From the IMG/VR virus record IMGVR_UViG_3300017917_003822, positions 1 to 64,000 of that record: a DNA stretch of 64,000 nt; one strand, written 5' to 3'. Positions 1 to 34,202 of this stretch are shown piece after piece; within the stretch, counting starts at the first letter, position 1, and every line of letters begins with the position of its first letter. Below the pieces are notes generated by a model. It was not told where the DNA came from. It did not search any database and worked only from the letters and a program-made list of their open reading frames with translations. Made by a program: the position numbers and the translations under genes.

Positions 1-1704
1 AGTGGTTCATCAGGAACTAGCGGGTCATCAGGAACTTCAGGAACAAGAGGATCCTCTGGATCTAGTGGTTCAAGCGGTTCATCAGGATCTAGTGGTTCAT
101 CAGGAACTAGTGGAGTTAATGGAACACCGGGATCTAGTGGTTCGTCAGGAACAAGTGGAACAAGTGGAGTTAATGGAACACCAGGAACCCCAGGATCTAG
201 TGGTTCATCAGGAACTAGTGGAGCTAACGGAACCCCAGGATCTAGTGGTTCATCAGGAACAAGTGGAACTAGTGGAGCTAACGGAACCCCAGGATCACCA
301 GGAACCCCAGGATCAAGTGGTTCGTCAGGAACTAGTGGAGTTAACGGAACCCCAGGAACACCAGGATCAAGTGGTTCGTCAGGATCTAGTGGGACATCTG
401 GACCTTCTACTAATATAAATGCCACAAACACAACAACTAACACCACATATTATCCGGTTTTTGTTACTGGTGCTGGTGGATCTACTCCTTGGATTAGAAC
501 AACTGCTAATGCATTTACATTTAATGCAGGCACTAATGTACTAACTGCAGACTCTATAACTGCAAATACCCGAATGGATGCTCCTATTTACTATGATTCT
601 AATAATACACTGTATTATGTGAACCCGGCAAGTACATCCAGACTGGATATATTGGAGGTAAATAAAACCATAGATGCTGTTACCTCAGTAACAGCCCCTA
701 TTTTCTTTGACAGAGATAATACCACATATTATGCTAATCCTGCAAGTACATCCAGATTATATGCGATAGATGTGGTAGACCTACTTAGTGTTGCTGCTGG
801 TACTATTCAGGGTAGATTCCACGTTTTCCAATATACTAATTTAGGTGGAACTGCTGGTAATAGCTTAATCCTACAGACCCTTGAAAACACTGGAGGATCT
901 GGGGGTAACAGAGTATTTATAAAAGATTATGCTTTTAGAGACGCTACGGGAACATCTTGGACAACTTGGAGACACCACAACTCCATTGATGTTGACGGGG
1001 TTTATAATACCCCTGGAACCAATACTAGAACATTCTGGGAAAGAGATCCTCTTAGCCAGGTACACTATTTTGGATCTAGCGCAAGCTACACTCTGACGAT
1101 AGACTCTGCAAATAACGTTGTTATTGCAAATAACATAGAAGTACAGGCTAATTCATCAGGTATTTACAGCGATGGTGGAGATTTAGCTGTAGGTGATTTT
1201 AATGGAAATGGTTACGGTGTTTCCCTTTATGCTAACGGTAATCAAAACTTCTCGGTGGCTGAGACTGTTATATATGCATACCAACCTTTAGCATACTATA
1301 ATCTTATTGGTACTGGTACTGTAAATGGTGAGATTGCATACTGGGGCGGGGGATCTGTAACAGCGGGACAATTATATTACTATAACTCTTCCGGTAACTG
1401 GGTTGATGCGGATGCAGATGCAGCTTCCACCGCAACAGGTTTACTAGCAATTGCTAGAAGTACAGGTACAGCATCTAACGTGGGAATGCTTTTAAGGGGG
1501 CATGCAAGATTCACTGCAAATTCAAATTACACGGCTCTTACAACAGTGGGTGCTCCTCTTTACATTTCAACAACCGCTGGAGGATTCTCACAAACCGCAC
1601 CAAACGGAACTGGTGATATTGTAAGGATTATCGGTTATGTCCAAAGTACAGCAAACGATCAGATCTATTTCTGTCCGGATACGACTTGGATTGAACTGGT
1701 ATAA
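1..1704 (+). CDS. Tail fibre-like protein with Ser/Thr-rich collagen-like (Gly-X-Y) stalk; 5'-truncated by the window edge
   Basis: Frame 1 is open from base 1 into the listed 574..1704 ORF. It has 45 uninterrupted Gly-X-Y triplets (4..408), a duplicated APIxxDxxNTxYYxNPASTSRL motif and a C-terminal beta-rich domain ending IYFCPDTTWIELV. Confidence 0.8.
   Translation, partial: SGSSGTSGSSGTSGTRGSSGSSGSSGSSGSSGSSGTSGVNGTPGSSGSSGTSGTSGVNGTPGTPGSSGSSGTSGANGTPGSSGSSGTSGTSGANGTPGSPGTPGSSGSSGTSGVNGTPGTPGSSGSSGSSGTSGPSTNINATNTTTNTTYYPVFVTGAGGSTPWIRTTANAFTFNAGTNVLTADSITANTRMDAPIYYDSNNTLYYVNPASTSRLDILEVNKTIDAVTSVTAPIFFDRDNTTYYANPASTSRLYAIDVVDLLSVAAGTIQGRFHVFQYTNLGGTAGNSLILQTLENTGGSGGNRVFIKDYAFRDATGTSWTTWRHHNSIDVDGVYNTPGTNTRTFWERDPLSQVHYFGSSASYTLTIDSANNVVIANNIEVQANSSGIYSDGGDLAVGDFNGNGYGVSLYANGNQNFSVAETVIYAYQPLAYYNLIGTGTVNGEIAYWGGGSVTAGQLYYYNSSGNWVDADADAASTATGLLAIARSTGTASNVGMLLRGHARFTANSNYTALTTVGAPLYISTTAGGFSQTAPNGTGDIVRIIGYVQSTANDQIYFCPDTTWIELV
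4..408 (+). repeat. 9-nt-period coding repeat, 45 x Gly-X-Y (GSS, GTS, GTP, GVN, GAN)
   Basis: Direct translation of frame 1: a GGN codon every 9 nt from 4 to 400. Confidence 0.95.
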
Positions 1705-1721
1705 AAGATCAGAATAAAATT

Positions 1722-2288
1722 ATGTATTATTTAAATCAAAAACTGGTGTTTGAAGATGATATGATTTATTTTTTGAATAAATCAGGCAACAGACATGAGG
1801 TTATGATGAGTTGGGAAGACCCCTTAATGAAGGCCTCAGCGGATTTCATTTGTCAAAATGGCGGACATATATTGGAAATTGGATTTGGTATGGGCATTTC
1901 TGCAAACTACATTCAACAAAACCAAATACTTTCGCATACCATCATTGAGAGTCATCCCGATGTTATACCAAGAGCTTTAGCATGGGCAGAGAATAAACCG
2001 AATGCCACTATAGTTCAAGGAAACTGGTACGATGTCTTACAAAATCTTGGTGTCTATGATGGTATTTTTTATGATACTTATGGTGACGAGGATTTTAGAA
2101 AATTTCCTGCATCTGTGTTACAGTTAGGCAAACCTGGAACTCTGTTGACTTTTTGGAATCCATTCTCTGAGCCTTCGAATATATTTGGGTTTGATGATGC
2201 TGAATATGATGTACATAATGTAAATCCCCCAAAAAATTCATATTTTGAATTCGATAAATATTATTTACCTAAAATCATAATGAAATAA
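1722..2288 (+). CDS. Class I SAM-dependent methyltransferase, GAMT/Rmt2-like
   Basis: VMMSWEDPLM, motif I ILEIGFGMG, HTIIESHP, YDGIFYDTY. Confidence 0.8.
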   Translation: MYYLNQKLVFEDDMIYFLNKSGNRHEVMMSWEDPLMKASADFICQNGGHILEIGFGMGISANYIQQNQILSHTIIESHPDVIPRALAWAENKPNATIVQGNWYDVLQNLGVYDGIFYDTYGDEDFRKFPASVLQLGKPGTLLTFWNPFSEPSNIFGFDDAEYDVHNVNPPKNSYFEFDKYYLPKIIMK

Positions 2289-2974
2289 TGCCAACTACAA
2301 CAGTAAACGCAACATACCAGGGATATGTTAGAAGAAGAATAATTAACTATATTGATTGGATTCTTGATGTTCGTGATGGTTTAAGCGGAACTCCCGTTAC
2401 CATCACTACCAATACATCAACTTCTCTTGCTATTGAGACGACCGAGACTGTTACCAGGTTGGGTTCTGATGGAATTTGTTCGCGAACTTTTTTATATTTT
2501 GACCTATCCAGTGTTCCTGGAATAATAACAGGAGCAACTTTGAGTGTTTTTGGATTTACTCCAAGTATGTTAAATACTATAACTGTTAAAAGCACAGCTT
2601 GGTCAGGTAGCAATTCTCTGGTTGCTAATGATTTTAGTGCGATAGATTTCAGTACACCTTACAGTAGTTCTCTACTTAGTTGGAGTACGACGGGATATAA
2701 CGACTTCGTAATGAACAGTACAGCTGTTTCCGATATGGTTGCTAATGGATACCTTAATATTGCAGTGATAGAGGCAGATTATGATTATGGTAGTAATTAT
2801 CCACCATTCGGAACTAATAATCAAAATGGTGTTGAATTTTTGGATGCAACATCTCCCATTAAATTAACAGTAACTTACATTAGTATCGAGCCTCTAGGTT
2901 TATCCCCTCTATTAGTAAATAAAATAAATGGAACATCATTTAGTAATATTTCTAAGGTAATAGGTGCGGGATAA
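2288..2974 (+). CDS. Putative virion/fibre-associated beta-rich protein
   Basis: T/S-rich; RTFLYFDLSSVPGIITGATLSV resembles DNRLRE/CBM-like domains; lies in the fibre locus. Confidence 0.5.
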   Translation: MPTTTVNATYQGYVRRRIINYIDWILDVRDGLSGTPVTITTNTSTSLAIETTETVTRLGSDGICSRTFLYFDLSSVPGIITGATLSVFGFTPSMLNTITVKSTAWSGSNSLVANDFSAIDFSTPYSSSLLSWSTTGYNDFVMNSTAVSDMVANGYLNIAVIEADYDYGSNYPPFGTNNQNGVEFLDATSPIKLTVTYISIEPLGLSPLLVNKINGTSFSNISKVIGAG

Positions 2975-3005
2975 TAAAAAATAAATAACCATTTCTTGAT
3001 AAATT

Positions 3006-3419
3006 ATGCCACTACCAGCATCTGGACCATTAGGTTTATCTGACATAGCACTCGAATTAGGGCTTTCTCTTAGTAACGTATCTCTGAGAAGTATGTCAAA
3101 CACGGCTGGGTTCACTACTCCCGATGCTATAAGTGAATTTTACGGATATAGTGCGTACACACTCTATGCTCTTGCTTGGTCTGCGTACGGTCCATGTAGT
3201 TATGTTTATTATGATATTTACCTAAGTGGAGATGGTAAATATTACGTAACAAATGACGGAGGATCTACATTTTCTCTAATGTATAGTGTTGCTGAATTTT
3301 GGTATGAATATCTATATTATGATCCGAATTTCATGGCCGATGTGTTTAATGCATATAGTGTAAATACAACATCCACCGTGATAAATGATGATGGGATATT
3401 TTTAAACAATTGTTTTTAA
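3006..3419 (+). CDS. Small tail fibre-associated protein
   Basis: N-terminus MPLPASGPLGLSDIALELG...ISEFYGYS is typical of small phage fibre-tip proteins. Confidence 0.55.
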   Translation: MPLPASGPLGLSDIALELGLSLSNVSLRSMSNTAGFTTPDAISEFYGYSAYTLYALAWSAYGPCSYVYYDIYLSGDGKYYVTNDGGSTFSLMYSVAEFWYEYLYYDPNFMADVFNAYSVNTTSTVINDDGIFLNNCF

Positions 3420-22040: not shown

Positions 22041-22649
22041 ATGCAACAAAAAGAAAAAAACATTCAGAAGATCGCGGAGGATTTTATCACTCTAAAGAAT
22101 GACAAAAATTTTAAAATTTTATTTGAGAGACTTAGACCAGGTATATTGAACCACTGCTTTCTTATTCTTAAAGAACAGGAACTTGCTGAGGATGCATTCA
22201 TAAATACTATGTCAAAGATATGGTTGAAAATAGACCAGTATAACGATGAGAGAGGAAATTTTTCAACTTGGTGTTATAACATAGCAAGAAATGAATCTTT
22301 GCTTCTAATGAAATCTAGAAAAAGATATCACAGTCACACGGACAGTGAACTTGAATTTCTTTCCTCGCAAAACACAATCGGTGATTCTGTTCAGTATTAT
22401 ACGATAGACGACGACCCAACTTATGCTTTCTACAATGAGGGTTCAGATTTGGATGTGGTGTATGAGTCAGTACTGGATGAAATTAGAGAATTACCCGAAT
22501 TATATAGGGATATTATGATCGATAGGGAAATCAATCATATGAAATATAAGGACATAGCGGAAAAATATGGAATCAAGAAAAGATCCATAGCAACCAGAAT
22601 TCGTAGAGCTAGAGGTAAAATAAGAAAAAAAATAGACGGGAAACAATAA
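22041..22649 (+). CDS. ECF-type sigma-70 factor
   Basis: Region 2 AEDAFINTMSKIW...FSTWCYNIARN; region 4 LPELYR...MKYKDIAEKYGI...TRIRRAR. Confidence 0.9.
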   Translation: MQQKEKNIQKIAEDFITLKNDKNFKILFERLRPGILNHCFLILKEQELAEDAFINTMSKIWLKIDQYNDERGNFSTWCYNIARNESLLLMKSRKRYHSHTDSELEFLSSQNTIGDSVQYYTIDDDPTYAFYNEGSDLDVVYESVLDEIRELPELYRDIMIDREINHMKYKDIAEKYGIKKRSIATRIRRARGKIRKKIDGKQ

Positions 22650-25581: not shown

Positions 25582-26256
25582 GTGACAGATTCTGAAACAG
25601 TAAACAATGATAATTTTGATGGAGGTACATCGAGTCAGGTGGGAGACATAAACCTGATTGGAGGTAATTCGGAATTTGCAATATCTCCATCAGGAGCTAC
25701 GGCTGGATTTGATATTAAATATAAGAATATAGCCGAAACCATGCCTGATCTGGAGATAATCGAAGCTACTTTTCAGAGGTTCAATGATCCAAATGAGGTT
25801 GAATTTATAAAGGAATCTTTTGAGGTTGTATACCAGGATAAGACATTAGATAAACTGGATGTTGTTGATTTCTTCCATCCTCTCCAAAGTTTTTCTAACT
25901 ATCAAAAACAAACTTTCGTTATTCTTCCTCAAACATCAGCTAATTTGGACCCTTCGTCATTCACGAGTACCAACGGTGAAGTTTCTATGCTGATAGCTAA
26001 AGCGGAATACCTTCCTGGTACCCCCATTGAGGAAAAGATTATTTTTTGGGATTATAAGGGTAATCAGAGAAATATAATGGGAGAAATAATGATTTTAACC
26101 GGTGCAATAAAGGAGAATCTTTCTTGGAAGGGATGGGACGTTGACCCTTTTTCGACATATGGACACACAGGACCTGCTAATTCGGCCAACGGAGGATTTA
26201 TATTCACGAATCCAACAGATTCGGAGGTACAATTAACAGTAATAACAGCAAATTAA
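25582..26256 (+). CDS. Putative structural protein (paralog of 26258..26755)
   Basis: Shares WxYKGN...MGExMxLxG...GW...GGxxFxNP with the next gene. Confidence 0.65.
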   Translation: MTDSETVNNDNFDGGTSSQVGDINLIGGNSEFAISPSGATAGFDIKYKNIAETMPDLEIIEATFQRFNDPNEVEFIKESFEVVYQDKTLDKLDVVDFFHPLQSFSNYQKQTFVILPQTSANLDPSSFTSTNGEVSMLIAKAEYLPGTPIEEKIIFWDYKGNQRNIMGEIMILTGAIKENLSWKGWDVDPFSTYGHTGPANSANGGFIFTNPTDSEVQLTVITAN

Positions 26257-26257
26257 T

Positions 26258-26755
26258 ATGGCAACTCAACCGATAACCTGTCCTTATGATGTACTTGAAG
26301 GATTTAGATTTTATAGAGGTGATTTAGTACTAGATAACGGCTTAACTAACAATCCACCGAAATATCTCTCTCTTAAGGATCTCAATATACCCGTTGATAA
26401 ATTCTCCAGAAGTAGAGTTACTCTTAAACCCGGAGGATATTCTCTTCTGAGTCAAACTGATATTGGTGACGAATATGGGTATGTTTCTTTTATAGCTGTG
26501 AAAGCGATATATCCCACTTCAACAGTGGAGTCAAGAAAATATATAAACTGGACATACAAGGGAAACACTAACTATATGGGGGAACTTATGGTTCTTTCTG
26601 GACAGAGAACATCTTCTACTGATTCAGAATTCGAGGGTTGGAATCTATCAAAACCTGGCACTATTCCCGAGAATGATCCAGGAAACGGTGGTATAGTTTT
26701 TTATAACCCTAGCACTGAAACCACAGTTAAGTTAGAAATATTGGTGTGTGGGTGA
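26258..26755 (+). CDS. Putative structural protein (paralog of 25582..26256)
   Basis: Shares WxYKGN...MGExMxLxG...GW...GGxxFxNP with the previous gene. Confidence 0.65.
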   Translation: MATQPITCPYDVLEGFRFYRGDLVLDNGLTNNPPKYLSLKDLNIPVDKFSRSRVTLKPGGYSLLSQTDIGDEYGYVSFIAVKAIYPTSTVESRKYINWTYKGNTNYMGELMVLSGQRTSSTDSEFEGWNLSKPGTIPENDPGNGGIVFYNPSTETTVKLEILVCG

Positions 26756-26816: not shown

Positions 26817-26841
26817 ATAAACAGTAAAAAAAAAGTAAACC

Positions 26842-29220
26842 ATGGACTTTATAAACCAAGTTAAAAATTTAAAAGAACTAACAAAATCACCAGAGGTAAG
26901 AGCTTTGTGTGAAAGCTTCCTTAGAGGTGAATCTGTTTCTAAGGATCAATTGATAGCTTCTATCAACGAACATAACGATTCAGAGACGATACAAATCAAT
27001 GAAACTCCAAGCATTACTAATCACATGGATGCTATAAGGAGAGAGGAGACCGAGGTTTCTAAGAAAACCGCTGCTGCTCTTATGGAGTCTTGGGGAGGAT
27101 TGGGATCAAGAACATCTTCTAACTCAGGATCTTACTTAAATAAATCGGAGGAGATTGAGAAAAAATCAGAAACCCTTTTTGAGAATATCTCAAAGGTAGC
27201 TTCATCAGACCCAGCTACTATCTCTTTTATGGATTCACAGAGTATAAAAAATCTTGGAGTTATTGAAGCGATTTCTAAATTGAAGGAATCATCAATTTAC
27301 ACATACCCAAAAGCTAAAATCGTTTGTGAGCAATATCAGAATCTTATCGTAAATAAGAGATTGCCTGAATTTGCAGTTATAAACAATTTTATAGCTGAAT
27401 TGGAATCTTTCAGCTGGGACAACACTGTTACCCCTATAGCTGATGATCTTAAATCCAAAGCTAAGAAATATTCAAGAGAGATAGAAGTTGCTAAAGTGTT
27501 GGAATCTATTAAGGGTAGTGGTAGTTCTTCTTTCTATTCTGAACTTTCTGAAACTTTAAATTCTTGGTTGGTTTCTGAGAGTAAGTCAAATGGTCTTTTA
27601 GTTAAAAATATTTCTAAATACAGCTTTAACCCAGTAGTCAGAAATCTTATAAACTTTTTAAATGTTCATGAGAGCAATGACACAAGAAAATTAGAAATCC
27701 CAGTAAATGCTCAGGGTGAATCTAGTGTATCTAAAGTATATTCTCCGGTTTTATTTGAGAACGGAAGAACTTTTTTCTATATAGGTGAATCTGTATTTGA
27801 AGCAACCGAGGATGAGCTTGTTAAACTTACCGAAAGCCAGCTATCTTCTCTTCCTGCTGATTATATTAAATTGGTTGAAGTTTCTAAGAAACCTCATGTT
27901 GCTATCAACGAGAATGGTATTTCAATCAAATTTGGTAAGAAAATAGTTAGATTGATCGAAGAGAATGAAAAAGTTGAAGTTTACTTAGGTAAAGATAAAC
28001 TTAAATTTGGTGAAGTTTCAGGACTTGCTAAAATATTAGGATTAGAGTCTGGCTCTTATTTCGGTGTTAATGAATCTGAAGTTGTTAATGACACTCTGGT
28101 TCTTTACACGAACTATTCTAACATAGTAGAATTAGATTTTGCTAAAAACATTTCTTCCAACATATATGAGGGAGTTTGTGTTAATCTATTCAAATGGAAC
28201 AATCAAATTTATGTTCAGAAGATTAACCAAACAATGAATGAAAATTCTATATTCAAGGTAAATGGAACACAGGCGGTATCTATGGTTAAATCTTATTTAA
28301 GATATGATATTTCCGAAGGTTTAACTGAATTTCTTGAGGGTGAGAATAAAATTAAATCTGTCATGATAAATGACAGAAATAAAGTTCTGGAAAATATCAC
28401 TAAGGTTGAGAATGAAATTCTTAAATTGAATTCATTGATGGAATCAACTCCTCTTTATAGAGAATCTAAAGAAATTTTATCTGCTAAATCTATTCTTGAA
28501 AAAGAACTATTAGTACTAAGAGAAAAATGGAATCAGATTAATTCTGAGCTTTCTAAGATTGATGAAGAGATTAAAATCGCATCTTTAATTAATATCTCGG
28601 AGGATGAGAAATTTAATATTGGTGATTTTATTAAAGTTAAGGAATCTGGAGAAACCGGAAAAATCATATCAGTAGACGGAACATCAGGAAGATACACTGT
28701 TCTTTTAGATAGCGGAAAGACCTCGGATTTCTTAGTTAACGAGATTTCTGATCTTGAGGAGGCACTAAGTCAGGCAGCTGAAAAAAATGCTGAAGATGCT
28801 GAAGATGAAGGACAAGAAGAAGTTAAAGAATCTAATAACTTGAACAAGTCTGATTTAAGTATCGAAGAACAAAAAAATCTTTTAAAAACTTTTGCTGAGG
28901 GACACGGATTTTCTAAAGCCCCAAAAGGAGAGGGTGATTCTATAGAAATGGGATTAGATTCTTTACATGGCTATAATATCACAATGAATGAAGGAAAGGA
29001 TAAAAAAGAGGAAGGGGATTTAGCAAAAGCTCCAGGTAACAACAAGAAGGAAAAAGGTAAAGTTGAAGGTGAAGATCTTTTAGCTGACGCTCCTGAAACT
29101 AAGGATAAGACTGAATTTGATGCTGAGGATGCTGATGGAGAAAAATATGAAATTGGTTACAATCTTAGAGAGGGTAACGAAGAAGGATTAGACGAATCTG
29201 AGGTTTTAAAAAAAAAGTAA
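26842..29220 (+). CDS. Large late protein, probably head-associated; KOW/SH3-like module, acidic tail; -1 frame extension to 29381
   Basis: Late promoter at 26809; many I/L-x-E sites; FNIGDFIKVKESGETGKIISVD; ends in an A9 run before TAA. Confidence 0.7.
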   Translation: MDFINQVKNLKELTKSPEVRALCESFLRGESVSKDQLIASINEHNDSETIQINETPSITNHMDAIRREETEVSKKTAAALMESWGGLGSRTSSNSGSYLNKSEEIEKKSETLFENISKVASSDPATISFMDSQSIKNLGVIEAISKLKESSIYTYPKAKIVCEQYQNLIVNKRLPEFAVINNFIAELESFSWDNTVTPIADDLKSKAKKYSREIEVAKVLESIKGSGSSSFYSELSETLNSWLVSESKSNGLLVKNISKYSFNPVVRNLINFLNVHESNDTRKLEIPVNAQGESSVSKVYSPVLFENGRTFFYIGESVFEATEDELVKLTESQLSSLPADYIKLVEVSKKPHVAINENGISIKFGKKIVRLIEENEKVEVYLGKDKLKFGEVSGLAKILGLESGSYFGVNESEVVNDTLVLYTNYSNIVELDFAKNISSNIYEGVCVNLFKWNNQIYVQKINQTMNENSIFKVNGTQAVSMVKSYLRYDISEGLTEFLEGENKIKSVMINDRNKVLENITKVENEILKLNSLMESTPLYRESKEILSAKSILEKELLVLREKWNQINSELSKIDEEIKIASLINISEDEKFNIGDFIKVKESGETGKIISVDGTSGRYTVLLDSGKTSDFLVNEISDLEEALSQAAEKNAEDAEDEGQEEVKESNNLNKSDLSIEEQKNLLKTFAEGHGFSKAPKGEGDSIEMGLDSLHGYNITMNEGKDKKEEGDLAKAPGNNKKEKGKVEGEDLLADAPETKDKTEFDAEDADGEKYEIGYNLREGNEEGLDESEVLKKK

Positions 29221-29381
29221 GTCGTAATTTCTACTTCGCGCCACAAGCAGAAGATCAGAATAAACCGGGTGAACCTTTTGTACAATCGTCCGAGGGTAAG
29301 TTAAGTAAAGCACCTGATGGAAAGAATATAATAGATAAGGATAACGAAGATAACGAAGAATCTGAAGAATCTAAGGAATAA
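29208..29381 (+). other. A9 / A_AAA_AAG slippery site and 54-codon -1 frame extension
   Basis: The -1 frame reads VSRNFYFAP...LSKAPDGK...EESKE* (TAA 29379-29381), ending just before the terminator. Confidence 0.6.
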
Positions 29382-29384
29382 GAC

Positions 29385-29418
29385 AAAAGAATGTAGCTAT
29401 ACGCTACATTCTTTTTTT
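29385..29418 (+). terminator. Intrinsic terminator
   Basis: AAAAGAATGTAGC-TATAC-GCTACATTCTTTTTTT. Confidence 0.85.
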
Positions 29419-29420
29419 AT

Positions 29421-29448
29421 GAAATCTTTCCCTATTTTTTGACTAAAA
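29421..29448 (+). promoter_or_regulatory. ECF-like promoter GAAAT-N17-CTAAAA upstream of the late sigma gene
   Basis: Same 17-nt spacing as the other copies. Confidence 0.6.
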
Positions 29449-29486: not shown

Positions 29487-29846
29487 ATGACAAAAATTTA
29501 TGTAAAGAATAGCGAGCTCATGGCAGCAGTTATAGAATCAAAGAATGCTGGAAAATTAACACCTGAGACCATAGAGATGTTCAATCTTATGATAGAGGGA
29601 ATATCTAAAAAAATGTCATATAAGGATCCTGAGGATAAAGAGGATTGCATGGCTTTTGCTATGGAGGACTTATGTAAATATTGGAATAGATTCAATCCTG
29701 AAAAATCAAACAATCCGTTTGCGTATTTCACTCAGATTGCAAAGAATGGTTTTGCTAAAGGTTGGAAAAAACTACATCCGCCAAAAAATCCTAAAACTAT
29801 ACCCTTTAGTTATATTACAGGGGAGGATAACTCATATAACGTATAA
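29487..29846 (+). CDS. gp55: Late-transcription sigma factor (T4 gp55-like)
   Basis: YVKNSEL, FNPEKSNNPFAYFTQIAKNGF. Confidence 0.88.
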   Translation: MTKIYVKNSELMAAVIESKNAGKLTPETIEMFNLMIEGISKKMSYKDPEDKEDCMAFAMEDLCKYWNRFNPEKSNNPFAYFTQIAKNGFAKGWKKLHPPKNPKTIPFSYITGEDNSYNV

Positions 29847-29855
29847 TTATTGATT

Positions 29856-30341
29856 ATGACTGATATAAAAAAAGTAAAACCGAACGGTGAATACAGATCT
29901 GGAAAATATGAACCAAAAAATCCGGAGAAATATATCGGTGATATCCATAATATAATTTTCAGATCTTCCTGGGAATATAGATTTTGCACATATTGTGACA
30001 CTAATGATTCCATACTAAAATGGAGTTCAGAACCTTTGTCCATAGATTATTATAATCCATTGGATAAAAAAACACACAAGTATAATGTTGATTTTTATAT
30101 GAAGGTGCTGAAAGAAAGCGGGGAAACCCAGGAATGGATTATCGAGATAAAACCAGAAAACCAAACTAAGAAGCCTATTTATGAGGGAACTATGACCGTA
30201 GCCAAACTTAAATCATATAATAGAAACATGCAGATTTGGATTACAAATCAGGCCAAATTCAAAGCTGCCAAAGAATGGGCGGAAAAAAGAGGTTATAGAT
30301 TCGGTGTGATCGATGAGAATTTTTTATTTAAAAGCAAGTAA
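29856..30341 (+). CDS. gp4: Head completion nuclease (T4 gp4-like, TnsA fold)
   Basis: PKNPEKYIGD, FRSSWE, WSSE, IEIKP, NQAKFKAA. Confidence 0.9.
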   Translation: MTDIKKVKPNGEYRSGKYEPKNPEKYIGDIHNIIFRSSWEYRFCTYCDTNDSILKWSSEPLSIDYYNPLDKKTHKYNVDFYMKVLKESGETQEWIIEIKPENQTKKPIYEGTMTVAKLKSYNRNMQIWITNQAKFKAAKEWAEKRGYRFGVIDENFLFKSK

Positions 30342-30943
30342 TGTATAACGATCTAGTTCTCCAGTATAAAGAATCCTTAAATAAATCGGATGACATTTTT
30401 TCAGCAACTGATGATTTTTTTTTAAAAAAATATTTTAAAAATGAATCAGTGGAGAGAAAATTTACTCCTCCTTTTGTACCAGGAGAGATTTACACTTTCC
30501 TATACCAAACGGATTCCGAGGTAAATGAGAAAAGACCCTTTATAGATAGAATGCCTTTGATTATATGTACAGATACGTTTAATACAAAGGAATCAGGTAC
30601 GATAATTAAGGGAATAGATCTAATAACAGTGCCACCGAGAATCAGGATTGATATCATCGGAAAAATCTATGACAATTTTAGCGAGCAGATAAAGTCCAAT
30701 GACTCATCATATACTAAAGGAGGAGCTAAATCGCCAATAAATTTGAAGGATCAGGTATTAAAAGTTTTGCTAAATAATACTGGTTATGTGAATTCTCTCT
30801 TCGGATTTAAGTACAAGTTTATAAGATCTCCCAAAGTTATATCCTCCGATGACTGGGCAAAGATACCATATTTGAGAGTAAATTTTATAGAGGGCTTACC
30901 TATACAATCGATATATAATGAATATCAATCGAAATTAATTTAG
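30341..30943 (+). CDS. DNA end protector protein (T4 gp2-like)
   Basis: PGEIYTFLY, DRMPLI, GIDLITVPP; adjacent to gp4. Confidence 0.7.
   Translation: MYNDLVLQYKESLNKSDDIFSATDDFFLKKYFKNESVERKFTPPFVPGEIYTFLYQTDSEVNEKRPFIDRMPLIICTDTFNTKESGTIIKGIDLITVPPRIRIDIIGKIYDNFSEQIKSNDSSYTKGGAKSPINLKDQVLKVLLNNTGYVNSLFGFKYKFIRSPKVISSDDWAKIPYLRVNFIEGLPIQSIYNEYQSKLI
30910..30917 (+). promoter_or_regulatory. Late promoter motif GATATATA (portal genes)
   Basis: Exact copy in the 3' end of the gp2-like gene, about 60 nt before portal 1. Confidence 0.65.
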
Positions 30944-30976: not shown

Positions 30977-32572
30977 ATGGCAGGTTTCGTAGATAATAAT
31001 AATCCATCACAAACCCCTGTTATACAGAGGATAAGGGAATCTGTGAGAAAGATCAGCACCTTTGGAATGAAGTATGATGACATGGTAATCAGAAATTCCC
31101 AAGCTGTTGGTGTAACAGAGGCGGCTTTCCTTAATAAAAATAAATCCAATGTCGAGGACGAGAGTATGTTATGGACGCTTGCTAAGCAAGATGTATCTTC
31201 CCGCCAGTTCATTGGTTATTTTGATAAGGATTATAAGGGAAAGAGAGATTTTCTAAGAAAGTTTTCGCTGAATCCTGAGATTGAATGGGTACTTGATACA
31301 ATTTGTGACGAGGCGGTTTCATATGATCCCTCCAATTTTTTTGCATATCCTGATTTTATAGATCTTACTGACATTAATGAAAAATTAAAAGAGGATCTAT
31401 ATGAAACATATAAAAAGATTTATGATATCTGGGGGTTTTCTGATGATATTACCGGTTGGCAGTATTTTAGACAATTTATTGTCGATGGATTCCTAGCATT
31501 TGAAATCATTTATGATGACAAGGGACAGAATATAATAGGTTTCAAGGAGCTTGATGCTGTTACTTTGGTACCGAGTGTTGAAAAACAAATAGACGGATCT
31601 TTTGTAAATACATGGACACAATATCCTCAGGACCCTAAAAGAAAGAGAGTTCTTTATGATCCTCAGATTATCTATATTTCTTACGCTAAGGGTAACTCAA
31701 TATCAAGAATAAGCTACATCGAGAGATTAATTAGACCTTATAATATACTTCGGATTATGGAGTATACTCGTGTTATTTGGTCTGTTATGAATGCATCATT
31801 TAAGCTTAAAATGACCGTTCCTATCGGGTCAAAATCTCCTCAAAAAGGTATGCAGACTCTAGGTGAGTTGATGAGTATCTATAAGGAGGATATTGAACTT
31901 AATGATGAAAGTGGCGAATTAACAATTGACGGTAGACCAAAAATACAATTCTATAAGAATTACTTGATGCCATCCGGAGTTAATGGAACTCCAACTATAG
32001 AACCTCTAAATACCGAGGGTCCTAATCTTAATGATCCGCAACCGCTGGCATATTTCTTTGATAAATTTATTCTTGAATCTAAGGTACCTCCATCGAGATT
32101 TCATAATCCTGACGGTGGTAGTACATCACCATATTCCAACGGAGCCGAAGGATTGGATAAGGAGGAAATAAGATTTGCTAAATTTATATCTAGACTTAGA
32201 TCGGTTTTCCAGGAAATATTAGTTAAACCTCTGTGGATACAGATGGTTAAAAAATATCCAAAACTGGAGGATGATTTTCTTTTTAAGAGTCAATTGGGAT
32301 TAGATTATTTTTCAGATAATCCATTTAAACTAAATCAGGAGATGGATATGATGAATAAGAAAAAAGAAGCTATAGTATCCATGAGTGGTTTGATTGGAGA
32401 TGATGAAAAACCATTCTTCTCTAATGCATTTCTTATTGAGACGTATCTTGGATTATCTAAGCAGGATATAGACGCAAATAAGGAGGCGATCGAGAGAAAA
32501 GAGAAAGCTAAAAAGAAAAAGGAGAAAGAAGGCGGTGAGGAAGAAGAAGGAACACCGGAAGTAACACTATAA
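30977..32572 (+). CDS. gp20: Portal protein, copy 1 (T4 gp20-like)
   Basis: PEIEWVLDTICDEAV, FIVDG, SYIERLIRPYNILRIME, VPPSRF, EEIRFAKFISRLR. Confidence 0.92.
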   Translation: MAGFVDNNNPSQTPVIQRIRESVRKISTFGMKYDDMVIRNSQAVGVTEAAFLNKNKSNVEDESMLWTLAKQDVSSRQFIGYFDKDYKGKRDFLRKFSLNPEIEWVLDTICDEAVSYDPSNFFAYPDFIDLTDINEKLKEDLYETYKKIYDIWGFSDDITGWQYFRQFIVDGFLAFEIIYDDKGQNIIGFKELDAVTLVPSVEKQIDGSFVNTWTQYPQDPKRKRVLYDPQIIYISYAKGNSISRISYIERLIRPYNILRIMEYTRVIWSVMNASFKLKMTVPIGSKSPQKGMQTLGELMSIYKEDIELNDESGELTIDGRPKIQFYKNYLMPSGVNGTPTIEPLNTEGPNLNDPQPLAYFFDKFILESKVPPSRFHNPDGGSTSPYSNGAEGLDKEEIRFAKFISRLRSVFQEILVKPLWIQMVKKYPKLEDDFLFKSQLGLDYFSDNPFKLNQEMDMMNKKKEAIVSMSGLIGDDEKPFFSNAFLIETYLGLSKQDIDANKEAIERKEKAKKKKEKEGGEEEEGTPEVTL

Positions 32573-32576
32573 TAAA

Positions 32577-34202
32577 ATGGCAGGATTTTTAGATTATTTA
32601 AAACCCAATCAATCTGCTCTAGGTAACATATTAAAAAACCTGGGGAACATATCAAAATTTGGTATGCAATATGATGATATGGTTGTGAGAAATTCACAGG
32701 CCATCGGTAAAACTGAGGGTTATTTCTTTAACCAGGAAGGAACAGGATTCACACAAAACGATGCCTTTTATTGGACAGCTTCCTATCAGGATACTAAGGT
32801 AAGAAAATATATTGCATATTTTGACAAGGACTATATAGAAAAAAGAAACTATCTCAGAAAGTTTTCTTTGAACGGAGAAATTGAATTCATATTAGATACT
32901 GTTGCTGATGAATCGATATGTTATGATGACAGGAATTATTTTGCACAACCCTCCTTTATAAATATAGATTTAAAGGATAAAATTAAGGAGGAGATGTCAA
33001 ATCATTATAATAGGCTGTATAATGTTTTTGGATTTCAGAACAGTGTTTTAGGTTGGCAGTATTTTAAACAGTTTTTAATTGACGGATTCTTAGCATTTGA
33101 AATTATTTATGATAACAAGGGAAAGGAAATCATAGGATTTAAAGAGTTGGACCCATCGTCTCTACAGCCCGTTGTTGAGAAAGTTGGCGAGACTGAATAT
33201 AAACAGTTTTGGATACAATATCCAAAAAATCCTCAGATGACTAGGAAACTTACTAACGAGCAGATCATTTATATTTCTTATGCGAAAGGAAATAGTATAT
33301 CGAGAGTAAGCTACATCGAAAGACTTGTTAGATCATATAACATTTTAAGAATCATGGAGAATTCCAGAGTTATCTGGAATGTTATGAATGCTTCATATAG
33401 ACTTAAGTTTATTATACCCATCGGTAGTCAGTCTCCACAGAAGGCTATGCAGACACTTGGCCAATTGATGTCTAATTATAAGGAGGACATTTCGATTAAT
33501 GATGCATCCGGTGAGTTAACAATAAATGGAAGACCAAAAGTTCAGTTTTATAAGAACTACCTATTCCCAGAGAAGGACGGTGTATCACCTCAGATAGAAT
33601 CTTTAAATCCAAGCGGACCTGATTTTAATGTAATGGAGAATGTTCTTTATTTCTTCAATAAGCTTAAAATGGATTCAAAAATTCCTTATGCTAGATTTGC
33701 ATCAAAGAATGGTACACCAGCCAACTATCAGATTTCCATAGATCAATTGGAGCGGGATGAAATTAGATTCGAGAAGTTCCTTAGAAGATTAAGATCCATA
33801 TTTCAGGAAATATTAGTCAAACCCCTTTATATTCAGATGTGCCTAAATCATCCCGAGTTATCTAAGGATAAGAGTTTCAAAGCTAACATAGGACTTAATT
33901 TCTACAGGGATAGTGAATTTGAGGAAATGGTTGAGATGACTGGATACACCAAAAGAAGTGAATTTATTAAAGGTCTGGGTGAGTTAAAAGTTAAATTTGG
34001 AGAAGAAGAAAAACCATACTTTGATAACGACTTTCTTATTCAGAGATTCCTTGGTATGAATCCTGATCAAATTAAAATGAATAAACTCTACAAAGAAAGA
34101 GAGGATAAAGCTGCTGAAAAAGCTAAAGGTGCTGAAGGTGCTGAAGGAGAAACAGAGGGAGCAGCTGAGGGAGAAGAAACAACACCGGAAGTAACGCTAT
34201 AA
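32577..34202 (+). CDS. gp20: Portal protein, copy 2 (T4 gp20-like)
   Basis: Same motifs as copy 1 (SYIERLVRSYNILRIME, IPYARF, RDEIRFEKFLRRLR); full length. Confidence 0.92.
   Translation: MAGFLDYLKPNQSALGNILKNLGNISKFGMQYDDMVVRNSQAIGKTEGYFFNQEGTGFTQNDAFYWTASYQDTKVRKYIAYFDKDYIEKRNYLRKFSLNGEIEFILDTVADESICYDDRNYFAQPSFINIDLKDKIKEEMSNHYNRLYNVFGFQNSVLGWQYFKQFLIDGFLAFEIIYDNKGKEIIGFKELDPSSLQPVVEKVGETEYKQFWIQYPKNPQMTRKLTNEQIIYISYAKGNSISRVSYIERLVRSYNILRIMENSRVIWNVMNASYRLKFIIPIGSQSPQKAMQTLGQLMSNYKEDISINDASGELTINGRPKVQFYKNYLFPEKDGVSPQIESLNPSGPDFNVMENVLYFFNKLKMDSKIPYARFASKNGTPANYQISIDQLERDEIRFEKFLRRLRSIFQEILVKPLYIQMCLNHPELSKDKSFKANIGLNFYRDSEFEEMVEMTGYTKRSEFIKGLGELKVKFGEEEKPYFDNDFLIQRFLGMNPDQIKMNKLYKEREDKAAEKAKGAEGAEGETEGAAEGEETTPEVTL

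What the first reader, a model, noticed from the sequence alone, without database searches (positions are those of the whole stretch)
29200..29418. Hidden C-terminal extension by -1 frameshift or slippage at an A9 run
Seen: the 792-aa ORF ends TTA AAA AAA AAG TAA, which contains the heptamer A_AAA_AAG. The -1 frame continues for 54 codons with matching acidic composition and another copy of the protein's own repeat (LSKAP; compare FSKAP, LAKAP, LADAP upstream). It stops at 29381, 3 nt before the terminator hairpin. Known: A_AAA_AAG drives -1 shifting in E. coli dnaX and IS elements, and A9 runs cause transcriptional slippage. Inference: two isoforms of a late head-associated protein. A one-base homopolymer assembly error is the main alternative.
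Basis: partly seen in the sequence, partly recalled or inferred. Interest (0 to 1): 0.66.

Follow-up and report, generated by a model that had tools for sequence, protein, structure and literature searches.

The report
Conserved A9 recoding site, phage gene
A run of nine A's at the end of a large phage gene is a real recoding signal, kept across a whole clade of uncultured giant T4-like phages, that lets some molecules carry an extra, strongly conserved 54-residue tail; the role of the protein and of the tail is unknown.

Summary
The 792-aa ORF (26842-29220) ends TTA AAA AAA AAG TAA. The -1 frame runs 54 more codons to 29381, 3 nt before a terminator hairpin.

It is not an assembly error. Three independent assemblies of near-identical phages read A9 with no indel. 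All 48 IMG/VR contigs matching the site pattern need a -1 shift (42 with A9, 6 with A10, none with A8).

The site is conserved in homologues down to about 25-30% identity. An A9/A10 run, usually with an adjacent stop, is followed by an open -1 frame. The extension is under strong purifying selection in that frame (pN/pS 0.26, against 1.5-1.9 in the other frames), and 38 of 40 distinct versions have no start codon.

One derived subclade has the extension fused in frame or split off as its own small ORF. Both forms keep the A9 run.

No RNA structure is conserved on either side, and the base after the run varies (C, G, T, A). The invariant element is therefore the run of at least 9 A. This favours RNA-polymerase slippage, with ribosomal -1 slippage as the live rival.

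The protein's function is unknown. "Head-associated" is not supported.

This is a new member of a known kind of system.

The parts
26842..29220 (+). Zero-frame gene for the short isoform (792 aa). The model shows a helical N-terminal region, beta-rich domains (about residues 294-473), a long helical hairpin (495-574), a small SH3/Tudor/KOW-like domain (593-637) and a disordered Lys/Glu-rich tail with h-x-x-A-P repeats (about 655-792).
   Evidence: The family has 281 hits in the 90%-identity cluster database and 238 representatives at 50% identity. No Pfam, PHROG or PDB assignment was found. AlphaFold2 model: mean pLDDT 75.5.
29208..29216 (+). A9 run, the slippage site. The in-phase heptamers A_AAA_AAA (29208-29214) and A_AAA_AAG (29211-29217) overlap it.
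   Evidence: A9 is read in 3 independent assemblies. A run of at least 9 A is present in every homologous locus examined that reaches the 3' end. The terminal KK[K/N] has an A run of 9 or more in 32 of 32 cases, against 1 of 23 non-homologous internal KK[K/N] sites in the same genes.
29218..29220 (+). Zero-frame TAA stop directly after the run. It ends the short isoform.
   Evidence: The adjacent stop is conserved in nearly all lineages. It is TAG in L055, one codon later in L033, and 16 codons later in L032/L047.
29217..29381 (+). -1 frame extension of 54 codons plus TAA. The long isoform would be 846 aa. A conserved peptide, SRNFYFAPx(4)Qx(3)Gx(2)Fx(5)Gx(3)KAPxGK, is followed by an acidic tail.
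   Evidence: pN/pS is 0.26 in this frame, against 1.5-1.9 in the other two. Column entropy by codon position is 17.7 / 12.4 / 44.1. There are 11 invariant residues among 29 sequences. 38 of 40 distinct versions have no start codon.
29385..29418 (+). Intrinsic-terminator-like hairpin plus T run, 3 nt after the -1 frame stop.
   Evidence: By eye, a hairpin plus T run follows the -1 stop in 29 of 31 distinct related loci. Two different stem sequences occur (GAATGTAGC and GAGAACGTAG).

Best explanation
This is a genuine, evolutionarily conserved programmed recoding site.

Standard expression of the gene ends at TAA 29218-29220 and gives a 792-aa protein. A fraction of products continue in the -1 frame from the A9 run (29208-29216). 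They gain a 54-residue tail, giving an 846-aa long isoform. The tail carries a highly conserved peptide (SRNFYFAP...GKLSKAPDGK) followed by an acidic end.

The shift happens on the homopolymer itself. The most likely route (about 60:40) is RNA polymerase slippage, which adds one A to part of the transcripts. Ordinary translation of A10 mRNA then reads straight into the extension. Ribosomal -1 slippage on the overlapping heptamers A_AAA_AAA and A_AAA_AAG, helped by the adjacent stop, may contribute or may dominate. Both routes give the same junction in this window: ...VLKKK-VSRNFYFAP....

Shown:
- the site exists and is A9;
- the site is conserved;
- the extension is protein-coding and has no start codon of its own;
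- in one subclade the extension is naturally fused to the same protein.

Inferred:
- both isoforms are made;
- their ratio;
- which machine slips;
- what the tail does. My guess is that it is a docking or interaction peptide carried by only a subset of molecules, as with the minor extended form of phage T7 capsid protein 10B or lambda gpGT.
For: The site is A9 and not an error.
- Contigs from 3 separate studies span it with 0 gaps.
- IMG/VR pattern scans found 42 contigs with A9, 6 with A10 (still needing -1) and 0 with A8.
- Among 5.8 billion protein clusters, only P0108, P0109 and P0111 carry the extension in frame.

The site is conserved.
- About 50 loci at 42-85% identity show an A9/A10 run, a stop, and a -1 ORF encoding KKK[L/V]SRNFYFAP....
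- Representatives with only about 25-46% identity over their matched stretches (L062, L064, L066, L067, L068) also have an A9-N-TAA site followed by an open -1 frame.
- A tree places this arrangement on all deep branches.

The extension is coding.
- pN/pS is 0.26 in the -1 frame, against 1.5-1.9 in the others, with third-position variability.
- 11 residues are invariant.
- The other two frames contain stops in 29-32 of 32 sequences.

The extension belongs to this protein.
- It is fused in frame in L036/L037/L043/L054.
- 38 of 40 distinct versions have no start codon.
- The terminator follows the -1 stop.

The run itself is selected.
- The terminal KK[K/N] has an A run of 9 or more in 32 of 32 cases. 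Apart from L036's copy of this same site, 1 of 23 internal KK[K/N] sites does.
- In the whole genome, about 10 of 16 A/T runs of 9 or more lie in the 5% of sequence that is non-coding.
- The run is kept even where the extension is fused or split off.

Transcriptional slippage is favoured.
- The base after the run varies: C in most, also G, T or A.
- No RNA structure is conserved downstream or upstream (window z = +0.43).
- No Shine-Dalgarno-like element is conserved upstream.
- A review (PMC5009743) states that bacterial RNA polymerase slips efficiently on 9 A or 9 T. Its examples are Thermus thermophilus dnaX and Shigella spa13, where 25-30% of the product is C-terminally extended. It also states that in E. 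coli A_AAA_AAC and A_AAA_AAA are much less shift-prone than A_AAA_AAG.
Against: - There is no direct evidence that the long isoform is made. The only RNA-library contigs found lie inside the gene (27246-27735 and 28049-28268), not over the site. Contigs cannot show minority A10 transcripts in any case.
- The polymerase and the host are unknown.
- An adjacent zero-frame stop and in-phase heptamers are what a ribosomal site would also show. The split between transcription and translation therefore rests on indirect arguments.
- The run could be partly explained by AT-rich codon usage (AAA is 79% of Lys codons). However, internal controls argue against that.
- No function or binding partner for the tail was found. 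The complex prediction gave no answer.
Confidence: 0.8

Rival explanations
1. Purely ribosomal -1 programmed frameshifting. tRNA-Lys slips on A_AAA_AAG (or A_AAA_AAA), stimulated by the adjacent TAA, and RNA polymerase slippage plays no significant part.
For: The window has the classic E. coli dnaX heptamer in phase. An in-phase A_AAA_AAN or A_AAA_AAA heptamer exists in every arrangement seen, including the phase-shifted L032 and the A10 lineages. The zero-frame stop lies directly after the site in nearly all lineages.
Against: Most lineages have A9-C, and some have T or A. A review reports these as weak ribosomal sites in E. coli. No stem-loop, pseudoknot or Shine-Dalgarno-like stimulator is conserved. 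A heptamer needs only 6-7 A, yet at least 9 are always kept, including the third position of the preceding, variable codon (GTA, TTA, TCA, CTA, GCA, GAA). Nine is the length reported for efficient polymerase slippage.
Confidence: 0.3
2. Assembly or sequencing error. The true sequence is A10 and the gene is a simple in-frame 846-aa ORF.
For: Homopolymers are error-prone. A one-base insertion would fuse the frames exactly.
Against: Three independent assemblies from different studies and habitats read A9 with no indel. All 48 IMG/VR contigs matching the site pattern need a -1 shift, and there is no frame-restoring length variant. No in-frame version exists in 5.8 billion protein clusters, apart from a subclade with a different junction sequence.
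Confidence: 0.01
3. The extension is not joined to the 792-aa protein in this phage. It is made separately (non-canonical initiation or reinitiation after the TAA), or it is an untranslated relic.
For: In L038/L039/L042 the homologous peptide is a stand-alone 74-codon ORF with its own ATG. The module can therefore work unlinked.
Against: 38 of 40 distinct versions have no ATG, GTG or TTG between the upstream -1-frame stop and the motif. Strong purifying selection rules out a relic. The split form is a single derived lineage, sister to the in-frame fusion.
Confidence: 0.05
4. DNA-level phase variation. Replication slippage switches the phage population between A9 and A10 genomes.
For: A9 tracts are also prone to slippage during replication.
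Against: No A10 in-frame or A8 allele was found in any assembled contig. Contigs do hide minority variants, so a low-level mixture cannot be excluded.
Confidence: 0.03

Closest known systems
Thermus thermophilus dnaX (tau/gamma by transcriptional slippage on a 9-nt homopolymer)
   Same: A 9-nt A/T homopolymer inside a coding region. It gives two isoforms with a common N-terminus and different C-termini. No RNA stimulator is needed. Stops lie nearby in the other frames.
   Different: In Thermus the zero frame gives the long product and slippage gives the short one. Here, in most lineages, it is the reverse. Only the L036-type in-frame variants have the Thermus polarity. The protein family is unrelated, and slippage has not been shown experimentally here.
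E. coli dnaX -1 ribosomal frameshift cassette (A_AAA_AAG with an upstream Shine-Dalgarno-like element and a downstream stem-loop)
   Same: The window has the identical heptamer in phase. The outcome is two isoforms.
   Different: No downstream stem-loop or upstream Shine-Dalgarno-like element is conserved. Most relatives have A_AAA_AAC instead. The shift lengthens the product rather than truncating it.
Phage T7/T3 capsid gene 10A/10B; Listeria phages PSA and A118 capsid and tail proteins; lambda gpG/gpGT
   Same: A phage late gene in which a minority of products gains a C-terminal extension by recoding near the 3' end. In T7 10B the extension is about 50 aa.
   Different: Those cases are ribosomal shifts in identified capsid or tail-chaperone genes. 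Here the gene family has no known function, the signal is a homopolymer of at least 9 A, and the virion location is unproven.
Shigella spa13 and mxiE (type III secretion genes expressed through transcriptional slippage)
   Same: Slippage on an A/T run produces a C-terminally extended product from overlapping frames. For spa13 this is about 25-30% of the product (review PMC5009743).
   Different: Those are bacterial chromosomal or plasmid genes with unrelated proteins.

Membership tests
Programmed -1 ribosomal frameshift cassette (dnaX / IS-element type) | Slippery heptamer X_XXY_YYZ in the zero-frame phase | tested here: met
   A_AAA_AAG at 29211-29217 and A_AAA_AAA at 29208-29214. An in-phase all-A heptamer is present in all arrangements.
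Programmed -1 ribosomal frameshift cassette (dnaX / IS-element type) | Downstream stimulatory RNA structure (stem-loop or pseudoknot 5-9 nt after the site) | tested here: not met
   RNAalifold on 27 sequences predicted 0 pairs. The fold of the window sequence has z = +0.43.
Programmed -1 ribosomal frameshift cassette (dnaX / IS-element type) | Upstream Shine-Dalgarno-like stimulator | tested here: not met
   The window has GAGG 5 nt upstream, but homologues read GACGAA or GACGAT. No conserved element or structure was found.
Programmed -1 ribosomal frameshift cassette (dnaX / IS-element type) | Overlapping -1 ORF that is conserved as coding sequence | tested here: met
   pN/pS is 0.26 in the -1 frame, against at least 1.5 in the other frames.
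Productive transcriptional slippage site | Homopolymeric A or T run of about 9 or more in the coding region, conserved as a run | tested here: met
   A9 or A10 in every locus examined. The run is kept regardless of the flanking codon, the following base or the frame arrangement. Internal KK[K/N] sites avoid such runs.
Productive transcriptional slippage site | Heterogeneous run length in mRNA over a homogeneous DNA template | not testable with these tools
   Only assembled contigs were available, and the RNA-library contigs do not cover the site.
Productive transcriptional slippage site | Trans-frame protein product detected | not testable with these tools
   There is no proteomics. The phage is uncultured.
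   - Pfam, PHROGs and a PDB profile search gave nothing.
- Foldseek and VIA-align matched only a Tudor/KOW-like mini-domain and a helical hairpin.
- BFVD and the ESM Atlas returned only uncharacterised phage proteins.
- The only hint is synteny: gp15-like upstream in relatives, and gp55-, gp4-, gp2- and portal-like genes downstream.

The most novel reading that the evidence does not exclude
The run of at least 9 A is an ancient, clade-wide isoform switch based on transcriptional slippage, in a conserved late gene of uncultured huge T4-like phages (relatives of the Lak phages and of the huge-phage record LR756500). Host or phage RNA polymerase stuttering sets a fixed ratio between a 'bare' protein and one carrying a conserved docking peptide. 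The run is kept even where the peptide has become fused (where slippage would instead truncate the product) or split off. In deeper branches the same signal sits in front of a whole SH3-like domain. As far as I know, this would be the first dsDNA-phage morphogenesis or late gene family whose isoforms depend on polymerase slippage rather than ribosomal slippage.
Probability: 0.45. Interest if true: 0.72.

Novelty: new member of a known kind. Interest (0 to 1): 0.62.

Why it matters
- Gene callers truncate this gene in hundreds of metagenomic phage contigs and leave 150-550 nt of 'intergenic' DNA that is in fact coding. Recognising the site corrects the annotation of a whole family.
- The site is a clean natural test bed for telling polymerase slippage from ribosomal slippage. 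The lineages differ in the base after the run and in frame polarity.
- The site marks a short, nearly invariant peptide as the functionally important end of an abundant but uncharacterised protein. That gives a handle for finding the protein's partner and role.
- In these giant phages, whose closest named relatives are the Prevotella Lak megaphages, stop-codon reassignment is the better-known decoding oddity. This adds a second kind of non-standard decoding. The genome itself reads well with the standard code.

Tried and rejected
- **Function search.** Nothing was found beyond a sub-threshold MSSS/SH3-like hit, a Tudor/KOW-like mini-domain and a generic helical hairpin. I tried Pfam, PHROGs, a PDB profile, Foldseek against PDB and BFVD, VIA-align wide, and the ESM Atlas by features and by shape.
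- **Tenacibaculum phage PTm1.** A BFVD structural neighbour comes from this phage, but the family profile finds no match in the PTm1 genome. I did not pursue it further.
- **Complex prediction.** The structured core (residues 100-660) with the extension peptide gave 'no answer' (score 0.00). This is neither evidence for nor against binding.
- **Other copies of the extension peptide.** There are none elsewhere in the 270-kb genome, so it is not a shared targeting signal.
- **Conserved RNA structures.** None was found downstream or upstream of the run. A small upstream hairpin in the window alone (z = -2.56) is not conserved.
- **Distant relatives.** The Lak phages and LR756500 lack the run and the extension.
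- **Other A8 runs near ORF ends in this genome.** These simply overlap the next gene's frame and are not recoding candidates.
- **Reads.** Only assembled contigs were on offer, so an A9/A10 minority in RNA or DNA could not be measured.
- **Literature.** Five literature searches found no description of this family or site.
- No alternative genetic code was needed or used; table 11 gives 95% coding density.
Full report
**What is there**

- The ORF at 26842-29220 (+, 792 aa) ends GTT TTA AAA AAA AAG TAA, with an A9 run at 29208-29216.
- The -1 frame is open from 29202. After a shift it reads VSRNFYFAPQAEDQNKPGEPFVQSSEGKLSKAPDGKNIIDKDNEDNEESEESKE: 54 codons (29217-29378), then TAA at 29379-29381.
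- A hairpin (29385-29415, core stem GAATGTAGC / GCTACATTC) with a T7 tail follows 3 nt later.
- The -1 ORF has no ATG, GTG or TTG.

**Context**

The window is the first 64 kb of a 270,629-bp IMG/VR virus record. CheckV estimates it as 99% complete. GC content is 36%, and table 11 gives 95% coding density, so the standard code suffices.

The neighbouring genes are T4-like:
- upstream: a tail sheath gene and two tail tube genes;
- directly downstream: a gp55-like late sigma factor (29487-29846), a gp4-like head completion protein, a gp2-like DNA end protector, and two portal paralogues.

The portal is closest to the uncultured huge-phage record LR756500 (44% identity), then to other LR75xxxx records and the Prevotella Lak megaphages. 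A Bacteroidota host is therefore plausible but not shown.

**Not an assembly error**

- Logan contigs from three different studies (marine, aquatic, wastewater) carry about 99.5%-identical sequence across the site, with zero gaps.
- I scanned IMG/VR for the site plus the first codons of the extension. This found 42 contigs with A9, 6 with A10 and none with A8.
- The six A10 contigs have the run in another codon phase (GAA AAA AAA AAT TAA). They still need a -1 shift.
- A word search of 5.8 billion protein clusters with a naturally fused C-terminus found only three clusters with the extension in frame. Those three have a different junction (KKN-P-SRNFYFAP).

**Conservation**

The 792-aa protein has 281 relatives in the clustered database. 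Nearly all full-length ones end ...[ED][VL]KK[NK]*.

In 57 IMG/VR loci at 42-85% identity, every locus that reaches the 3' end has four features:
- an A9 run (rarely A10);
- one more base, usually C, and G in the window's case;
- a stop;
- a -1 ORF encoding KKK[L/V]SRNFYFAPK..NQNKPG..FV.SS.GKLSKAP.GK plus an acidic tail.

Across 32 distinct sequences, the first 35 codons show clear coding-type conservation in the -1 frame:

| Frame | pS | pN | pN/pS |
|---|---|---|---|
| -1 (extension frame) | 0.71 | 0.18 | 0.26 |
| Other two frames | 0.17-0.20 | 0.31 | 1.5-1.9 |

- Column entropy by codon position in the -1 frame is 17.7 / 12.4 / 44.1.
- Eleven residues are invariant among 29 peptides.
- 38 of 40 distinct versions have no in-frame start codon upstream of the motif.
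- By eye, a terminator-like hairpin plus T run follows the -1 stop in 29 of 31 distinct loci, with two alternative stem sequences. The transcription unit is therefore built around the extended frame.

**Depth of the feature**

An exhaustive HMMER search gave 238 representatives at 50% identity. I fetched DNA for five distant ones.

| Locus | Identity over the matched stretches | Site | -1 frame content |
|---|---|---|---|
| L066 | 46% | A9-T-TAA | A recognisably homologous extension (SKVWSFAPE...SSEGKMSVAPDGK...) |
| L062 | 33% | A9-C-TAA | 86 open codons, unrelated sequence |
| L068 | 26% | A9-C-TAA | More than 100 open codons, unrelated sequence |
| L064 | 30% | A9-G-TAA | SH3-like domain and more (over 200 codons) |
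| L067 | 28% | A9-C-TAA | SH3-like domain and more (about 85 codons) |

In L064 and L067 the site lies directly after the helical hairpin. The SH3-like domain, which is in the zero frame in the window's protein, is in the -1 frame there. A maximum-likelihood tree puts the '-1 with adjacent stop' arrangement on all deep branches.

**Variants**

One derived, well-supported subclade shows every other arrangement:
- L032/L047: a -1 shift is still needed, but the zero frame runs 16 more codons.
- L033/L034: A10-GCT-TAA.
- L036/L037/L043/L054, and proteins P0108, P0109 and P0111: an in-frame fusion (TCA AAA AAA AAC CCC AGT).
- L038/L039/L042: a split. The main gene ends TAA TAA, and a 74-codon ORF with its own ATG encodes ...NEENADVKKNLSRNFYFAP....

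All of them keep the A9 run. In the fused form, slippage would give a truncated product, which is the polarity of Thermus dnaX.

**Is the run itself selected?**

- In these genes AAA makes up 79% of Lys codons, and 39% of third positions are A.
- The terminal KK[K/N] has an A run of 9 or more in 32 of 32 cases.
- Of 24 internal KK[K/N] sites, only two do, and one of those is the homologous site in the L036 fusion.
- Genome-wide, roughly 10 of the 16 A/T runs of 9 or more lie in the 5% of sequence that is non-coding.
- The codon before the run varies (GTA, TTA, TCA, CTA, GCA, GAA) but always supplies the A needed to reach 9 or 10.

**Mechanism**

Neither RNAalifold (27 sequences, 0 pairs on either side) nor folding of the window (z = +0.43 downstream) shows a stimulatory structure. 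A weak upstream hairpin in the window (z = -2.56) is not conserved. No Shine-Dalgarno-like element is conserved.

The base after the run is C in about 25 of 32 common contexts. It is G in 4, and T or A elsewhere.

According to the review PMC5009743:
- bacterial RNA polymerase slips efficiently on 9 A or 9 T, as in Thermus dnaX and Shigella spa13, where 25-30% of the product is C-terminally extended;
- the RNA-DNA hybrid in the polymerase is 9-10 bp long;

The invariant is therefore what polymerase slippage needs, not what a classical ribosomal cassette needs. On the other side, an in-phase all-A heptamer and an adjacent zero-frame stop are always present, and these are compatible with ribosomal slippage.

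I put transcriptional slippage at about 60% and ribosomal slippage at about 40% as the main route. They are not exclusive. In this window both give the same product...VLKKK-VSRNFYFAP... (846 aa). Transcripts with A8 or A11 would give ...KKSKS*, which is effectively the short form.

**What the protein is**

The function is unknown.
- The AlphaFold2 model (65-sequence alignment, mean pLDDT 75.5, above 90 over much of residues 140-580) shows a helical N-terminal region, beta-rich domains, a long helical hairpin, a small SH3/Tudor/KOW-like domain and a disordered tail.
- Structure searches match only the mini-domain and the hairpin, plus uncharacterised phage proteins, including one from Tenacibaculum phage PTm1.
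- Some relatives carry inserted PG_binding_1 domains.
- Synteny is conserved in relatives: gp15-like upstream, and sigma-, gp4- and gp2-like genes downstream.

Together this suggests a late or morphogenesis role, but no more. 'Head-associated' is not supported.

The extension occurs nowhere else in the genome. A complex prediction with the protein's own core gave no answer.

**Expression**

One metatranscriptomic library holds two contigs inside the gene (27246-27735 and 28049-28268). It holds none over the site, and DNA carry-over cannot be excluded.

**Verdict**

- The assembly-error alternative is excluded.
- The site is a deeply conserved homopolymer recoding signal in an uncharacterised gene family of uncultured huge T4-like phages.
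- It is a new member of a known kind of system (recoding for a C-terminally extended isoform). Its unusual, testable feature is that the signal looks transcriptional.
- Five literature searches found no prior description.

Noticed in passing
window 30977-32572 and 32577-34202: Two tandem gp20-like portal paralogues. Both match Portal_T4 / phrog_213 strongly, at 531 and 541 aa. A duplicated portal gene is unusual.
   Followed up: no
L064 (gene 1501-3090) and L067 (gene 602-2122): In distant homologues of 506-529 aa, the A9-N-TAA site lies right after the helical hairpin, and the SH3-like domain is encoded in the -1 frame. The same signal therefore gates a whole domain there, not just a tail.
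   Followed up: partly
L038 5805-6032 (also L039 and L042): The extension is a stand-alone 74-codon ORF with its own ATG. The main gene ends TAA TAA about 10 nt upstream. The main protein in this lineage carries two inserted PG_binding_1 (PF01471) domains near the N-terminus.
   Followed up: partly
window 26826-26834: A second A9 run lies in the 5' leader of the same gene, 7 nt before the ATG. It may be an A-rich leader or ribosome-binding region of the type seen in Bacteroidota-like systems, or another slippage-prone site.
   Followed up: no
window 30415-30423: A T9 run followed by A7 lies inside the gp2-like gene (30341-30943). It is one of very few A/T runs of 9 or more within coding sequence in this genome. 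I did not check for an alternative frame.
   Followed up: no
window 25582-26256 and 26258-26755: Adjacent genes of 224 and 165 aa, with no family hits, appear to be paralogues. They share a motif, ...W.YKGN....MGE.M.L.G.... A 166-aa homologue precedes the recoded gene in distant relatives (L062, L063).
   Followed up: no
window 22041-22649 and 29487-29846: The window holds two sigma-factor-like genes: a 202-aa protein (phrog_1740) and the 119-aa gp55-like late sigma factor directly downstream of the recoded gene.
   Followed up: no
window 29416-29430 and the equivalent positions in related loci: After the terminator, the sequence TTTTTTTATGAAATC (or TTTTTTTTGAAATA) is conserved across relatives. 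It may be a promoter or leader element for the sigma-factor gene.
   Followed up: no
whole genome G000:C1 157052-157523 (outside the window): ARAGORN calls a tmRNA-like gene (tag EVEYAVAA*) and only one tRNA in the 270-kb genome. I did not verify either call.
   Followed up: no
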